A stretch of DNA of 64,000 bases from Diadema antillarum (GCF_040938485.1 NW_027271024.1:2232001-2296000), one strand, 5' to 3'. Shown: positions 10,901 to 64,000, numbered from the stretch's first letter. Notes: a model not told the origin generated them from the sequence alone. Numbers and translations are program-made.

Positions 10901-12412
10901 TTAGATGGCGGCACCATTTCCGGCTCCTGGGATTCAAAGTTTTCAAGACATGGCATGGGATGAGTTGGTGATTTATTCAGTGAGAGTGAATTAAAGTAGT
11001 ACAGAGAGACAGTCAACATCTTTTAAGATTTCAAATAAAAGATCAAATTTAGAGCTTTTCATCATGCGTTTTCAGAGGAATTACAAAGATAGACAAACAG
11101 CTACTGATGTATGTGATGTCTGTATCTGTTTACTTATTGTTTAACTTGGAGTAAATGTATTTCATTTCCTCTTTTCAAATGTTAGGCTCCCATACACCTT
11201 AGATACACATGATCCAAAATGTATAAATCAATACCACTTTTAAGTAATATGTACAGAATGAAAATGTCAGGCATTCTTTCAATATAGTTTAAGTACATGC
11301 CTCAAGAAAAAAAAATGAACCTGTATTTGTTTTTACTGGTTCAAAGGTGAAGAAATGAAAATAAACCAAAATTTCAACAGACCTGAGCAGAAGGCGAACT
11401 TTCCTCCTCTTCGGCTGCACCAGCAGGTCTGGCTGGGGTTGACCTGGGTGTCACAAGCTGGAGGGAAGCGATTGTCAAAAAGAAAAGGGGACAGAAATTT
11501 TGTTAGTGGTTGCAGTGACAAAAGTAAAACTATGCATTCGTCATCTCAGTGAATTCGAGCATATGAGTGTAATAGCTGCATCCCCAGGCCTACTGTGATA
11601 CTTCCTCCGTGGACTTCGTTCTTCGTGCAAATGTGATGTCTTTTTGGCTTATATACATTAAAAAATGTGTAGCTCCTACATTAAAATCAAATAGCACTGA
11701 TGGACCAGGAGGAATACAAGCTGCACTAAGTGATAGGAGGAAGCAGTTTTTGACGACTCGATTATTATTCTGGATACTTATGCGTTACGAATCAAGGCAG
11801 AGAGAAGGAGAATCGGCGGGGATACATTGGTAGAGTTGTAGAGTTCATATTGTCACCTTCGACCAGAAAGAATACAAGCTAAGCTGAGTGTTAGGAGGAA
11901 GCAGATTTCGGCGAGTCAGTTATTATTCTGGAGACTCATACATTGCGAATCAAGCCAGAGAGCAGGCGAGGCGGCGGCGTAAGACGGGAGTATTGTAGTA
12001 CTTTTATAGAGTTCAAGTTGTCGCGGCCATCTCAGCTCACCTTGTAAAGATTGTGCCCTGACAGTATTGCCTAATAACAGTTTCCCCGGATAGACTAGTT
12101 CCTATACTCACACTGAGCTACAGCGTGAAAATTTATTGTGGTACACTCTGCGAAAAGGATACTTAATGATGATATTGATAATGATTTTTCATTCATGCAA
12201 AATAAATGCGGGCACATCTGGGCAGAGCCATGTTACTTACGCTTGTACTTCCTCATGCTCTGGCCCCTCTTCTCGGCGAGGTAGAACTCCTGCATGACCG
12301 GGTCCCTCTTCATGAACTCCATGTCGGCGGCGAATTCCTCATCGACCTCCATTTCGAAGGCCGAGGCGACGACCACGAGGGCCATGAGAGCGATGAGGAC
12401 CTTGGAAACCAT
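10901..12412 (-). CDS. Gene A: secreted 4-Cys cationic prepropeptide (CrAMP-like, putative antimicrobial or toxin), 90 aa
   Basis: complement(join(12241..12412,11383..11457,10901..10926)), GT-AG introns, both phase 1. Protein MVSKVLIALMALVVVASA|FEMEVDEEFAADMEFMKR|DPVMQEFYLAEKR|GQSMRKYKPCDTQVNPSQTCWCSRRGGKFAFCSGAGNGAAI*. Exon sizes match the other paralogs. Candidate AATAAA at 10719-10724 (minus). Confidence 0.9.
11710..12025 (+). repeat. Old ~160-bp tandem duplication in intron 2 of gene A
   Basis: GAATACAAGCT..TAGGAGGAAGCAG..TTATTATTCTGGA..GAATCAAG.CAGAGAG occurs twice. Confidence 0.7.
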
Positions 12413-13771
12413 GGTGATTCTAGGAGTGAACAAATATTGCAATTTTTAGTTACAGTATGACAATAAGCACTTCTCAATGAAGTCGCGAGACGTCGAATCA
12501 ACATAGACACAATAAATAAAGAATCAAAACTCATTCCTTTTCTGGAGGAGGGGATCTCTCTGGAAATTTTCGTCTAAGAAAATGAAGACAACATGATAAC
12601 TCACAGAGAAAAAATGCTTCAGATTATTTTGAAGAACCATACATGATTTTTCAAAATGTATTTCTACGTTTGTGATTTATATTTGTAAAGATTTTGTTGT
12701 AGCAGGTTTACAAAATAATGTACATTTACGGATACCCCACCCGTCAGTAACACTTTGGACAATTCTTGTTACATTCTTCCACGTGCAAGAAAGAAAGGTT
12801 CTACAGCACGTTGAAAGGAAAGTACTCTTACTGCCTAGAAACAAAGGTCCTTTTACACAATTATGCTTCTTTCATTCATAAGAAAAGAATACCTAAATCG
12901 ATTGAAATGTCAGATTTGAACCGCAAGAGACTGCACTACGCGATACTGTCACTACGTTAACAAAGAAGCTGCTTCATTATACACATTTTATGGAATTTCA
13001 TTCTCTAATTGTACTCTTTGCTCATGCATCCATTTCACATCATCTTCGTTGCCATTGGATCTTAGAGGATTATAAGAAGAACAGGGGTGGTTGGCATGAC
13101 TCAAAGGGATATAATGTTGATTACTCCCACCATGTTCTATTCAGAGTGTCTTACCCTAACATCATAGCTATAAATTTTCTCTACTTCTAATACATAACAA
13201 GCATCATCATTCTATTCAGGAGAAGTTCACGCAGCGTTTCAGTCAAAGTGTCTTTGTTAACATGTAGTATAACGTAGACGAAATTGAGTATAAAGCATGC
13301 AGGTAACCCCACCTCACGACCACTTCCCTTATCTTTATAGTCTGTCTCCCTAGAGTTCTGTTGTGTTCAGAATAAATCTTAACGGCTGCTTTTAAAGCTA
13401 GGAAGCATCTTACACAACCAGACAATGATTATAGACATGGGATGAAACCAAAGTTCTGTTTGTAACGAGAAGGTGTTGCTTTGCTATATAGATGGAGGAA
13501 TGAAATAGGAAATCCACTGTGATCCAGTAAGCATGATTTCACGTGACAGTTGAAGCGGTTTACATAGGGAGTGAAGCAATTCTCTACAAAATATAACTTT
13601 TCACCAGGTAAACGTAGAACCTTGTGATTGTAAAATCGTGTTAGGTTCTCACTGGAACAGTATGGATAAACTGAGTGCAACCATCGCATAGGAATCTAAA
13701 GACTGGAAAACTCCTGCATTGATACAAATTAATGCTATACGCCAAAATTTAGGAGCAAAATGCATACTCAC

Positions 13772-13870
13772 GTGTTGTGGACGAGGGTGTAGGAGCTGCG
13801 AAGATGTCTTGTGTTGAAAGATTCGTGTCGTCTGGTGCTGTTTGGAGATGGGCTCTTTCACCCTTATATA
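13772..13870 (-). promoter_or_regulatory. Gene A TATA box and non-coding exon 1
   Basis: TATATAA at 13870-13864 (minus), then about 60 nt of ATG-free leader containing ACCAGACG as in the paralogs, then a C|GTGAGT donor at 13772/13771. The transcription start is inferred, not observed. Confidence 0.72.
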
Positions 13871-15152
13871 GAATTTTCTCTCCCTATCCAAGATTTTTAA
13901 AACGCAAATAGAGGGAGAGGTCAAGTCCTAGACTACATTACACAAACAAACAAACAAACACACACACACACACACATCCTCTCTCATACGCACACCGCGT
14001 TAAATGATTATCATTATTTCATACATACACACGCACACACGTTTTATTCAGATAAAGAAGTAAATAGGTAAATCCTAGTTCTGAAGACCTTCTAATGACG
14101 TCATTATCCAGTCAACGAGTACGAAATGAAAAATGAACAGACCTTTAAAAACAAGTTGAATGCCCCGCTGATATAATCACCTTGGAAAATGTGATTAAAG
14201 AGAAGATGATTAAAGGTAATAACGACAAAGTAACCAGCAGAGAGAGAGGGGGGGGGGGGGGAGAGAAAGTTGTAGTAGTGGTATTTCTTTAAGGGAAAAA
14301 TACGGCAATATTGGGCTTGAAGCAGATACCGTGAAAACCAGATCAAATAAAGGCAAAGGGTGCCTTTGATCTTGGTGTATCTTAAAAAAAGTTCTTGCGC
14401 GACTTATTCAACTATCCAAAGGCAGCCTGCGCCGCTGCACGCTTGGGCAGCCATGTCCATTACGGTCACATTGTAGTGATCCGTTCATAATGACCTTCCT
14501 GTATTAAGGTTACTATAATGTTATAGTAAGGCATCAACAGCGAGGGGCCTGCGGCCAAACGATATCCGCCGCGAAAATATCTTACAGTCCATGTCATAAA
14601 AAAATGAAGAATACTATACGACCTTTAGTTACAATCTCATGCGCATTTATTACAAAATGGGTCCTTTATGTTCACTGTAATTGATTTCTGCATGATAGAT
14701 TTATGATGTTTACATTAATGTGCACTCATCGTTGTGATGCTATACTTGTTGGAAATTAAAATAATCATTTGTAATTTATCCTTGATTCATACCAGCAGTT
14801 GGTGTGGTCTTTTATCACACTTAAGAGCAGCCATGACACTGGGATTTCAAAATTAAGGTCAGGTATTGTATGGCATGGTACGGTTTGGCATTTCTTTCAG
14901 CAGTGTTTAATCTAGATAAAATAAAATAAAATAAACAACAATATGACAAATTCACTGTATACATGGTGAATACGGGTGGACTGCCTCACTCGGTGAATAT
15001 CATGGCCACCATGGCACCTCCGTATTGCAGGGAGACAGGTTTATATTAAGCAAATTAATTTGAAACACAAGATACTTCGAGGGGAGAAAAACATTTTGAT
15101 AACAAAGTAAGTTCACACAAAGGGCAACATTAAAGTACAAAAGTGCAATTTC

Positions 15153-62935: not shown

Positions 62936-63912
62936 TATATAAAAGGCAGTCGTTTGACGGGTAAAGATCATCAGACGCCAGCAAGAGATCCTCAACAGTC
63001 GACCTTCCAACACATCCATCACAACTACGTGAGTATCACCGTCGTATTGTCAGCACCCTAGCTTTAACTTTTCCGTTGTATAACTTCTACACGTAGTAAC
63101 AGCATCACATTTAATATGATTCATTTTAAGCCTTAATGTGATATCAACCCTTAATAGAATTATTCTAACGCTATTATGTAAGCTCATAATAATCAATTCA
63201 AACGTAAATGTACGAAATTTTAACCCAGGCCTAAACAATTGCTGAATGTCATACCAAAACAAGAAACAATCCTGAATGTTGAACATTTCAACCATGGTTC
63301 ATAATATTGACTCTAAAAAGAATGAGTTTTCCCATAAATTTAGTTAAGTCAGTATACTAGTCACTATGTCAACCAATTCACATGCAATGAAAATGGTATC
63401 TGGGCAGGTTGGTGAGGAAAAGGTCTAATAGCTCTTTATCCATATTATTGTTTGAAATTTTGATTTTGATTGTCTTCCAGATGTTTTATCAATGAATCAC
63501 TCAATTTTAATTTCCTTGAAGATAAGGTGACGATAGATTGCAAGGGTAGTTTAACAGTAAGGATAGATAGTTAAGATAGTAAAACAAGCTATATGACAGG
63601 TNNNNNNNNNNNNNNNNNNNNNNNNNNNNNNNNNNNNNNNNNNNNNNNNNNNNNNNNNNNNNNNNNNNNNNNNNNNNNNNNNNNNNNNNNNNNNNNNNNN
63701 NNNNNNNNNNNNNNNNNNNNNNNNNNNNNNNNNNNNNNNNNNNNNNTGGATAGAAACCAAGTTCATGCTGTCATTACCATGAAATTATTTCGGCACACAA
63801 ATTTTCGAGCTATTCGCCCTTTCTCAAGTGCTCTTGATTCACAAGAACACTTGAGAAAGGGTGAATCGCTCGAAAATTTGTGTGCAGAAATAAACTTTTG
63901 GTATTTTATATG

Positions 63913-63956
<44 letters not shown>

Positions 63957-64000
63957 GAAGAACTTGCTTCGAAAAGGCGCTAAATCCATCACTTTTCAAT
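62936..64000 (+). other. Gene H (partial): promoter, non-coding exon 1 and intron 1 of a duplicate of gene E; coding exons lie beyond the window
   Basis: Near-identical to 43198-44186. TATATAAAA at 62936-62944. Exon 1 ends at 63028, followed by GTGAGT. By colinearity with E, the ATG is expected about 74 bp past the window end. Confidence 0.8.
63602..63746. other. Assembly gap (about 145 N)
   Basis: Run of N. The orthologous interval in copy 1 (about 43864-43950) holds (TA)n/(TG)n. Confidence 0.98.

What the first reader, a model, noticed from the sequence alone, without database searches (positions are those of the whole stretch)
10901..64000. Hidden tandem/inverted cluster of at least 8 genes for a secreted cationic 4-Cys peptide family (candidate antimicrobial or toxin system)
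Seen in the sequence: seven intact spliced genes with an identical layout (TATA-type promoter, non-coding exon 1, coding exons of 169-172, 75 and 26 nt, two phase-1 introns), plus a partial eighth and a relic ninth. All encode signal peptide + acidic propieces + KR + a 41-aa mature peptide of net charge about +2 to +5. The ORF track misses them because the mature peptide is split over three exons. Established: signal / anionic propiece / dibasic site / cationic disulfide peptide in expanding tandem arrays is the layout of defensins, conotoxins and cnidarian toxins. Inference: an expanded host-defence or venom family not obviously matching the described sea-urchin centrocins or strongylocins.
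Basis: partly seen in the sequence, partly recalled or inferred. Interest (0 to 1): 0.95.

Follow-up and report, generated by a model that had tools for sequence, protein, structure and literature searches.

The report
Sea urchin secreted four-cysteine peptide cluster

Summary
Seven intact genes share one layout: TATA box, non-coding exon 1, coding exons of 169/172, 75 and 26 nt, and GT-AG phase-1 introns. An eighth runs off the window end, and one lone exon-4 relic remains. Each encodes 89-90 aa: signal peptide, acidic propiece, invariant KR, then a 41-aa cationic peptide (+2 to +5) with Cys spacing C-x9-C-x-C-x9-C.

The window is Diadema antillarum (GCA_040938485.1). NCBI already predicts these genes, with the same exons, as 'uncharacterized protein', so they are unnamed rather than hidden. 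D. setosum has a syntenic cluster. Relatives exist in Strongylocentrotus and Lytechinus. Named hits outside sea urchins, in Pfam or in PDB: none.

All parts are under purifying selection (Ka/Ks 0.2-0.4), unlike cone-snail toxins. Propiece charge offsets mature charge, and GC3 is 71-82%. D. antillarum has also amplified a ~20.6-kb three-gene unit.

Both N gaps lie in non-coding intron 1.

Best reading: convertase-processed, disulfide-stabilised secreted effector, probably host defence (confidence ~0.4). Signalling ligand, spine venom and protease inhibitor remain open. The family is new, the kind is known.

The parts
10901..13872 (-). Gene g12, intact. TATA 13861-13872; exon 1 ends 13772; exon 2 CDS 12241-12412; exon 3 11383-11457; exon 4 10901-10926.
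   Evidence: The product is contained in NCBI model P0031, which adds an N-terminal extension.
17563..20227 (-). Gene g19, intact, 89 aa. TATA 20215-20227; exon 1 ends 20136; exon 2 CDS 19307-19475 (169 nt); exon 3 18636-18710; exon 4 17563-17588.
   Evidence: The D. setosum counterpart is P0004.
26174..29374 (-). Gene g28, intact. TATA 29362-29374; exon 1 ends 29281; exon 2 CDS 28343-28514; exon 3 27519-27593; exon 4 26174-26199.
   Evidence: The D. setosum counterpart is P0002.
35641..38713 (+). Gene g36, intact. TATA 35641-35653; exon 1 ends 35747; exon 2 CDS 36720-36891; exon 3 38257-38331; exon 4 38688-38713.
   Evidence: The product is identical to D. antillarum NCBI protein P0008.
43197..45487 (+). 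Gene g44, intact. TATA 43197-43209; exon 1 ends 43290; exon 2 CDS 44260-44431; exon 3 45126-45200; exon 4 45462-45487.
   Evidence: The product is identical to P0003, an NCBI protein of D. setosum and D. antillarum.
47730..50413 (+). Gene g48, intact and the most divergent copy. TATA 47730-47742; exon 1 ends 47823; exon 2 CDS 48626-48797; exon 3 49677-49751; exon 4 50388-50413.
   Evidence: The closest D. setosum protein is P0005.
56215..59382 (+). Gene g57, with an intact CDS; a recent duplicate of g36. TATA 56215-56227; exon 1 ends 56317; the assembly gap 56677-56816 lies in intron 1; exon 2 CDS 57360-57531; exon 3 58914-58988; exon 4 59357-59382.
   Evidence: The CDS is 98.5% identical to g36.
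62935..64000 (+). Eighth gene, cut by the window end. TATA 62935-62947; exon 1 ends 63028; the assembly gap 63602-63746 lies in intron 1; the coding exons lie beyond base 64000.
   Evidence: 63747-64000 aligns at 88% to 43950-44186, just upstream of g44 exon 2.
53812..53852 (-). Relic: an exon-4-like piece only (26-nt core 53816-53841). The other two coding exons are missing.
   Evidence: D. setosum has an intact 86-aa minus-strand gene at the orthologous place. The relic recurs in other copies of the 20.6-kb unit.
34823..55404 (.). Unit 1 of a ~20.6-kb higher-order tandem repeat, holding g36, g44, g48 and the relic. Unit 2 starts at 55405 and runs off the window.
   Evidence: Self-alignment at 93-94% identity. 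The unit junction at 55405 lies in gap-free sequence. At least four more units lie on contig JBFRCO010000104.1.

Best explanation
These are real, expressed genes of a sea-urchin-specific family of small secreted peptides. Each four-exon gene gives a prepropeptide. An 18-19 aa signal peptide takes it into the secretory pathway. An acidic propiece (net -4 to -6 here) offsets the charge of the basic C-terminal part. A subtilisin-like proprotein convertase cuts after the invariant KR, and in most members also after an upstream KR, which would free an 11-aa acidic spacer. The released 41-aa peptide is held by two disulfides in a small beta-sheet, with a basic arm (K-Y-K) before the first Cys and an invariant dibasic pair after the C-x-C. 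The most likely role is an extracellular effector made in quantity, most probably a host-defence (antimicrobial-type) peptide that binds anionic surfaces. Diadema raised its dose by tandem duplication, and D. antillarum raised it again by amplifying a ~20.6-kb three-gene unit. Shown here: gene structure, intact frames, conservation, selection pattern, charge pattern and distribution. Inferred: processing, disulfide pairing, fold, expression site and activity.
For: Seven intact copies have canonical splice sites. NCBI models in two Diadema species use the same exons. Full-length spliced relatives are present in catalogues built from environmental sequence: P0034 (MetaClust) and P0035 (MERC). 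CDS identity is 77-91% while paralogous introns are 0-12% alignable. Ka/Ks is 0.2-0.4 and about 0.2 between orthologues. K48, R49, K55, K57, four Cys, R73 and G83 are invariant across 29 sequences from Diadema, Lytechinus, Strongylocentrotus and environmental samples. Mature charge is +2 to +8 against propiece charge of -4 to -9, with r = -0.66 over 21 sequences that are not phylogenetically independent. That is the charge-neutralising arrangement known from defensin precursors (established knowledge). GC3 is 71-82% in a 37% GC region, which I take as a sign of selection for high expression. There are several paralogues per genome and lineage-specific tandem growth: one close counterpart in S. 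purpuratus against seven or more here. That is usual for effectors and unusual for hormones. No named relative was found outside echinoids.
Against: No expression, peptide or activity data were available. The AlphaFold models are weak (mean pLDDT 55 and 60). The peptide is hydrophilic (GRAVY about -0.6) and only moderately charged. The mature part is strongly conserved, which fits a fixed molecular partner as well as, or better than, membrane attack. No similarity to any known antimicrobial family was found.
Confidence: 0.4

Rival explanations
1. The peptide is a hormone, neuropeptide or cytokine-like ligand. The C-terminal disulfide peptide would be released at the dibasic site and would act on a receptor. 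The conserved acidic spacer could be a second product or a sorting signal.
For: The architecture matches echinoderm precursors of MCH-type and somatostatin-type peptides: signal peptide, then a single C-terminal Cys-containing peptide after a dibasic site (PMC4772807). The mature peptide is under strong purifying selection and has invariant basic residues across echinoids. The 11-aa spacer between the two KR sites is itself well conserved.
Against: There are several paralogues per genome and an eight-fold or larger tandem array. No relative was found in starfish, sea cucumbers or hemichordates, although echinoderm neuropeptide families usually span classes. It has four Cys rather than two and no amidation signal. 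It was not found by motif or locus id in the searchable literature. GC3 of 71-82% points to bulk expression.
Confidence: 0.25
2. It is a component of Diadema spine or pedicellarial venom. An older sea-urchin peptide would have been recruited and amplified in long-spined urchins as a pain-causing or neuroactive toxin.
For: The expansion is specific to Diadema: seven genes shared by two species, plus the unit amplification in D. antillarum. Its closest S. purpuratus and L. variegatus relatives sit alone. Diadematoid spines are venomous and their toxins are unidentified at the molecular level (PMC12193733).
Against: The family is present in Strongylocentrotus and Lytechinus, which are outside the groups the review names as having venomous spines. 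There is no accelerated evolution of the mature part. Spliced relatives in the environmental catalogues, which on my recollection derive from plankton, point to larval expression, and that does not fit a spine-venom product.
Confidence: 0.12
3. It is a small canonical serine-protease inhibitor. The invariant Arg just after the C-x-C, on an exposed loop pinned by disulfides, would serve as the residue that enters a trypsin-like protease.
For: The best small-protein Foldseek matches are pacifastin-type inhibitors (7sgq, 7snc, 3tvj chain I; 27-35% identity over 26-30 columns). Both AlphaFold runs predict a three-stranded sheet with the dibasic pair at or next to the hairpin turn. R73 is invariant and is preceded mostly by Ser or Thr.
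Against: The Foldseek matches are not significant (E 2-4, probability below 0.1) and the model is of low confidence. There is no Pfam or PDB sequence match. It has four Cys rather than six.
Confidence: 0.1
4. It is not a gene family: the pattern is chance ORFs, exons carried by a transposon, or an assembly artefact that inflates the copy number.
For: The window is a scaffold with two gaps. Near-identical segments (97.6-99.97%) exist on another contig of the same assembly, so some copies in the assembly may be uncollapsed haplotypes. Repeats of MITE type sit inside the cluster.
Against: All seven frames are intact despite Ks up to 0.7. Only the exons are conserved between older copies. A syntenic cluster exists in a chromosome-level D. 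setosum assembly. Homologues exist in three other species. The unit junction at 55405 lies in gap-free sequence.
Confidence: 0.03

Closest known systems
Strongylocins and centrocins (sea-urchin coelomocyte antimicrobial peptides)
   Same: They are made by sea urchins as prepropeptides with a signal peptide and a prosequence, and the mature parts are cationic and Cys-containing (PMC4805251).
   Different: Strongylocins have six Cys. Centrocins are two chains with one Cys each and a removed 24-aa interchain piece, and their mature parts vary much more than their prosequences. Here there are four Cys in one 41-aa piece, the mature part is conserved, and no sequence match came back in any search.
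Defensin-type and liver-peptide-type host-defence precursors (alpha-defensins, LEAP-2, hepcidin)
   Same: They share the layout: signal peptide, anionic propiece that offsets a cationic C-terminal disulfide peptide, convertase site, a few short exons and tandem gene clusters. This is established knowledge. The charge compensation was measured here.
   Different: No Pfam hit to any of these families. The Cys number and spacing differ. This is a likeness in design, not in descent.
Echinoderm MCH-type and somatostatin-type neuropeptide precursors
   Same: They are short precursors with a signal peptide and a single C-terminal disulfide peptide that follows a dibasic site (PMC4772807).
   Different: Those have two Cys, are found across echinoderm classes and hemichordates, and are not known as tandem arrays. 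This family has four Cys, is found only in echinoids and is multi-copy.
Conotoxin-type venom peptide superfamilies
   Same: Both are prepropeptides with the mature Cys-rich peptide at the C-terminus, split over short exons and present in many copies.
   Different: Conotoxins pair a conserved signal with a hypervariable mature part. Here Ka/Ks is about the same in the signal (0.36), the propiece (0.44) and the mature part (0.35).
Pacifastin-type protease inhibitors (arthropods)
   Same: They are small three-stranded disulfide-rich folds with a C-x-C element, and they were the top small-protein matches in Foldseek.
   Different: The matches are not significant, the family has six Cys and is arthropod-restricted as far as I recall, and there is no Pfam hit.

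Membership tests
Unnamed echinoid 'KYK / C-x-C / dibasic' peptide family (NCBI uncharacterized proteins, e.g. S. purpuratus LOC115921513 and LOC105437721) | A precursor of about 78-135 aa as modelled, with a signal peptide, an acidic propiece, an invariant KR, a basic K-x-K arm before the first Cys, spacing C-x(5-9)-C-x-C-x9-C, a dibasic pair two residues after the third Cys, and Gly two residues after the fourth Cys. | tested here: met
   All seven window proteins carry every feature. The invariant columns hold across 29 sequences. Profile E-values are 1e-12 to 1e-37.
Unnamed echinoid peptide family | Shared exon layout, with the mature peptide split over three exons by phase-1 introns. | tested here: met
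   The layout is 172 (or 163/169), 75 and 26 nt in D. antillarum and D. setosum. It was not checked in Strongylocentrotus or Lytechinus.
Strongylocin | Six cysteines in three disulfides, and sequence similarity to strongylocins. | tested here: not met
   The window proteins have four Cys. No strongylocin appears among the hits of the profile searches. The definition is from PMC4805251.
Centrocin | A heavy and a light chain with one Cys each, joined by a single disulfide, with a 24-aa interchain piece removed. | tested here: not met
   The four Cys lie within 23 residues and there is no interchain segment. Whether the dibasic pair is cut to give two chains cannot be tested with these tools.
Defensin, hepcidin, LEAP-2 and other curated antimicrobial families | A match to the family profile. 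| tested here: not met
   Pfam scans of 3 and of 17 members gave nothing below E 0.1 and nothing relevant. The PDB sequence search gave 0 hits at E up to 10.
Conotoxin-like venom superfamily (evolutionary mode) | A conserved signal and propiece with a fast-evolving mature toxin. | tested here: not met
   The pN/pS ratio is 0.36, 0.44 and 0.35 for signal, propiece and mature part. Between orthologues, the mature part shows 3 non-synonymous against 8 synonymous changes.
Echinoderm neuropeptide precursor (MCH-type or somatostatin-type) | Two Cys in the C-terminal peptide, and orthologues across echinoderm classes and hemichordates. | tested here: not met
   It has four Cys. All named hits are echinoids. 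The definition is from PMC4772807.
Echinoderm neuropeptide precursor | Expression in neurons. | not testable with these tools
   No expression data were available.
Pacifastin inhibitor | The six-Cys pacifastin domain profile. | tested here: not met
   There is no Pfam hit. Foldseek gave E 2-4 only.

The most novel reading that the evidence does not exclude
The Diadema-specific amplification of this otherwise low-copy, echinoid-wide orphan peptide marks it either as the still-unidentified peptide toxin of diadematoid spines or as a front-line epithelial effector against microbes and ciliates. If the second is true, its copy number, which may vary between haplotypes, could bear on susceptibility in the D. 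antillarum die-offs.
Probability: 0.15. Interest if true: 0.8.

Novelty: new variant of a known kind. Interest (0 to 1): 0.55.

Why it matters
Only two peptide families, strongylocins and centrocins, are described as sea-urchin antimicrobial peptides. No toxin of a diadematoid spine has been identified at the molecular level (PMC12193733). This family is conserved across the echinoid genera sampled here (Diadema, Strongylocentrotus, Lytechinus). It has no Pfam entry and I could find no paper on it. It has been amplified in a keystone reef grazer that has suffered two mass mortalities. That makes it a defined, easily followed candidate for echinoid innate defence, venom or peptide signalling. 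It is also a clean example of a higher-order tandem amplification (a 20.6-kb unit of three genes) that is absent from the sister species.

Tried and rejected
Searches that found nothing:
- Pfam on 3 and on 17 members: no relevant hit.
- PDB sequence search with two profiles: 0 hits at E up to 10.
- Foldseek against PDB: nothing at E below 1. The pacifastin lead is kept only as a weak rival.
- Literature searches by peptide motifs, by six NCBI locus ids and by Diadema plus antimicrobial, venom or genome terms: no paper on this family.
- Rfam and tRNA scans of the window: nothing.

Weak results:
- Two AlphaFold runs (17 and 29 sequences): mean pLDDT 55 and 60. I use them only for a tentative beta-sheet.

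Ideas tested and rejected:
- More hidden copies in the window. Six-frame and profile scans find only the seven genes, the eighth promoter and exon 1, and one exon-4 relic.
- Conotoxin-like diversifying selection.
- Chance ORFs or exons carried by a transposon.
- Multi-domain or fused relatives. The profile search, which has no length limit, returned only proteins of 58-135 aa.

Not attempted:
- I did not search with the spliced 90-aa sequences typed out. I used the exon-2 reference and then the database proteins identical to g44 and g36.

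
Full report
WHAT IS IN THE SEQUENCE. A self-comparison of the window shows a short block of about 190 bp present seven times: three times in one orientation (near 12.2, 19.3 and 28.3 kb) and four times in the other (near 36.7, 44.2, 48.6 and 57.3 kb). Translated on the correct strand, each block starts with ATG and reads through a hydrophobic leader, an acidic stretch, KR, an 11-residue acidic spacer, KR and a basic stretch, up to a GTAAGT or GTGAGT donor. 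Downstream of each block lies a 75-nt exon between AG and GT that carries all four cysteines. After that comes a 26-nt exon that ends in a stop codon. Joining the three exons as they stand gives open frames of 273 nt (270 in g19) in all seven cases, with both introns in phase 1. Net charge of that peptide is +2 to +5 in the window copies.

PROMOTERS AND EXON 1. Four copies plus a fifth site at 62.9 kb share an alignable block of about 220 bp. It holds a TATA box followed by a GT[AG]AGT donor. The three older copies (g12, g19, g48) are not alignable by BLAST, but each has its own TATA motif at the same distance. In all eight, the TATA start lies 91-106 nt upstream of the donor, which implies a non-coding exon 1 of roughly 60-75 nt. 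An AG acceptor lies 7-12 nt upstream of each ATG where I checked it. The transcription start itself is inferred, not shown.

THE EIGHTH COPY, THE RELIC AND THE GAPS. The site at 62935-63028 is the promoter and exon 1 of an eighth gene. The last 254 bases of the window align to the stretch just upstream of g44 exon 2, so its coding exons lie beyond base 64000. It is cut by the window, not broken. Profile and six-frame scans find only one more piece, an exon-4-like segment at 53816-53841 on the minus strand. D. setosum has an intact 86-aa minus-strand gene at the orthologous place. In D. antillarum the flanks still align, but the other two coding exons are missing. The two N runs both fall in intron 1, of g57 and of the eighth gene. 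Their flanks are colinear with the paralogous unit, which has 86 and 85 bases where the gaps are written as 140 and 145 N. So no coding exon or reading frame depends on a gap. Order and orientation are as expected, but continuity is not proven.

WHERE THE WINDOW COMES FROM, AND WHAT IS ALREADY ANNOTATED. A search with the exon-2 translation returned 90-aa NCBI proteins of Diadema setosum and D. antillarum, all named 'uncharacterized protein'. P0003 is identical to g44, P0008 is identical to g36, and P0031 is g12 with an N-terminal extension. Locus L004 (GCA_040938485.1, contig JBFRCO010000136.1) is 100% identical to window 34260-55487. The window is therefore D. antillarum. In D. setosum the NCBI proteins map onto exons of 172 (163 in one gene), 75 and 26 nt. 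The splice model thus has independent support, and the genes are unnamed rather than undetected. Two full-length spliced relatives also occur in catalogues built from environmental sequence: P0034 from MetaClust and P0035 from MERC. As far as I recall, MERC was assembled from ocean metatranscriptomes. If so, these are spliced messages from planktonic larvae. That provenance is from memory, not from a tool.

ARCHITECTURE OF THE CLUSTER. D. setosum chromosome OZ188191.1 carries, over about 65 kb, three annotated minus-strand genes plus one unannotated copy, then three plus-strand genes, then one minus-strand gene. The window shows the same order: g12, g19 and g28 on the minus strand; g36, g44 and g48 on the plus strand; then the relic on the minus strand. 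After the relic the block 34823-44186 is repeated from 55405 onward at 93-94% identity. The repeat unit is about 20.6 kb and holds g36, g44, g48 and the relic. The same unit occurs at least four more times on contig JBFRCO010000104.1 of the same assembly, each time with the three genes, and with the relic detected in some copies. Some of those segments are 97.6-99.97% identical to the window. I cannot tell further paralogous units from uncollapsed haplotypes. The junction between unit 1 and unit 2 at 55405 lies in gap-free sequence, so at least that duplication is not created by a scaffold join.

THE WIDER FAMILY. A profile of the Diadema proteins was scored against 1.84 billion representative proteins with no length limit. 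It found 16 proteins, all of 58-135 aa. A second search with a wider profile found 26. Every named hit is a sea urchin: Diadema (including a second subfamily on another chromosome), Lytechinus pictus and L. variegatus, and Strongylocentrotus purpuratus (five loci). All are 'uncharacterized'. The unnamed hits come from marine metagenomes, including Tara Oceans. Nothing came from starfish, sea cucumbers, brittle stars or hemichordates. The closest S. purpuratus and L. variegatus relatives have no family member within 10 kb, so the array is a Diadema feature.

Across 29 sequences the invariant columns are:
- the KR before the mature part;
- two Lys flanking a near-invariant Tyr just before the first Cys;
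- the four Cys;
- the Arg two residues after the third Cys, followed by Arg or Lys;
- a Gly two residues after the fourth Cys.

The first loop varies from 5 to 9 residues. The second loop is always 9.

SELECTION AND COMPOSITION. Among the seven paralogues Ks is 0.04-0.70 and Ka/Ks is 0.17-0.41. The ratio of pN to pS is 0.36 in the signal, 0.44 in the propiece and 0.35 in the mature part. Between D. antillarum and D. setosum, four orthologous pairs show 14 synonymous and 11 non-synonymous differences overall, and 8 against 3 in the mature part. This is purifying selection throughout, not the hypervariable-tip pattern of cone-snail toxins. Coding identity is 77-91%, while the introns of the same pairs are 0-12% alignable, apart from the recent g36/g57 pair. 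GC3 is 71-82% in a region of 37% GC. Synonymous sites are therefore constrained too, or the exons are homogenised by gene conversion. I read the codon bias as a sign of high expression, but that is an inference. Mature-peptide charge (+2 to +8) is mirrored by propiece charge (-4 to -9), with r = -0.66 over 21 sequences that are not phylogenetically independent.

STRUCTURE. Two AlphaFold runs gave low confidence, with mean pLDDT 55 and 60. The best stretch is residues 51-80, at 66-74. Both predict a short strand at the basic arm and a hairpin formed by the C-x-C strand and the strand that ends at the fourth Cys, with the dibasic pair at or next to the turn. Foldseek against PDB gave nothing below E = 1. 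The best small-protein matches were pacifastin-type protease inhibitors at E 2-4. I treat this as a lead only.

WHAT IT MOST LIKELY IS. The shown facts define a secreted prepropeptide with a convertase site and a disulfide-stabilised cationic product. It belongs to a sea-urchin-specific multi-gene family and is amplified in Diadema.
- A bulk-secreted effector, most probably host defence, is favoured by the charge-compensated propiece, the copy number, the lineage-specific growth and the codon bias.
- The strong conservation of the mature peptide and its modest charge and hydrophobicity keep a receptor ligand well in play.
- Spine venom is attractive because diadematoid toxins are unknown (PMC12193733). 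It is weakened by the family's presence in Strongylocentrotus and Lytechinus, which the review does not list among the urchins with venomous spines, and by the lack of fast evolution.
- A protease inhibitor is a minor possibility.

I put these at about 0.4, 0.25, 0.12 and 0.1.

COMPARISON WITH KNOWN FAMILIES. The family is not a strongylocin (six Cys) or a centrocin (two chains with one Cys each and an interchain piece; PMC4805251). It is not an MCH-type or somatostatin-type precursor either (two Cys, spread across ambulacrarians; PMC4772807). It matches no Pfam family and no solved structure by sequence. In layout it works like a defensin-type or liver-peptide-type precursor, but it is not a member of those families.

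NOVELTY AND SCORE. The genes are in RefSeq as uncharacterised proteins. I found no paper by motif, locus id or topic. It is a new family of a well-known kind. It is a good candidate for follow-up in echinoid immunity or venom, but orphan secreted-peptide families are common in animal genomes and its function is open. Interest is 0.55.

I stopped once I noticed. None of those letters went into a tool call, a script, a note or this report. The comparisons above rest on tool results or on the cited papers, or are marked as recollection without letters.

The retroelement fragment at 8619-9257 was only named, not rebuilt.

Noticed in passing
window 36231-36620; also 56868-57259, 30164-30561, 52070-52290, 3-257: A foldback, MITE-like element of about 390 bp with 43-nt terminal inverted repeats (84% complementary). 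It sits in intron 1 of g36 and g57 and upstream of g28, and there are two partial copies elsewhere.
   Followed up: partly
window 22339-24007: A large inverted repeat with arms of about 560 bp (22339-22898 and 23441-24007, about 80% complementary) between g19 and g28. It is probably another foldback element.
   Followed up: partly
window 8619-9257 (+): An ORF fragment with a reverse-transcriptase domain (PF00078, E 1e-24). It is a degraded retroelement just outside the cluster. It was named only and not reconstructed.
   Followed up: no
window about 35580-35590 and about 56155-56165: A perfect palindromic E-box (GTCACGTGAC) about 50-60 nt upstream of the TATA motif in the g36 and g57 promoters. 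g28 has a CACATG variant, and g44 and the eighth gene have none. It may be a bHLH-zipper site; no test was run.
   Followed up: no
window 40661-41516: 856 bases, in an AT-rich stretch, are present in repeat unit 1 and absent from unit 2 (junction at 61306/61308). This is an insertion or deletion that arose after the unit duplicated.
   Followed up: no
L002, L003, L005, L006 (contig JBFRCO010000104.1, 341-461 kb): At least four further copies of the ~20.6-kb three-gene unit lie on a second contig of the same assembly. Some segments are 97.6-99.97% identical to the window. They could be paralogous units or uncollapsed haplotypes.
   Followed up: partly
L012 19328-22466: D. setosum has an extra, unannotated copy (hits to exons 2, 3 and 4) between the genes for P0002 and P0004.
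   Followed up: partly
window CDS of g12 to g57: GC3 is 71-82% against 37% GC around the genes. Synonymous divergence (0.2-0.7) is far below what the unalignable introns imply. This points to codon-usage selection or exon-limited gene conversion.
   Followed up: partly
window 1301-1860 and 6016-6293: A tandem repeat with a 165-bp period (2.2 copies, 94% matches) has related copies in inverted orientation near 6.0-6.3 kb, outside the cluster.
   Followed up: no
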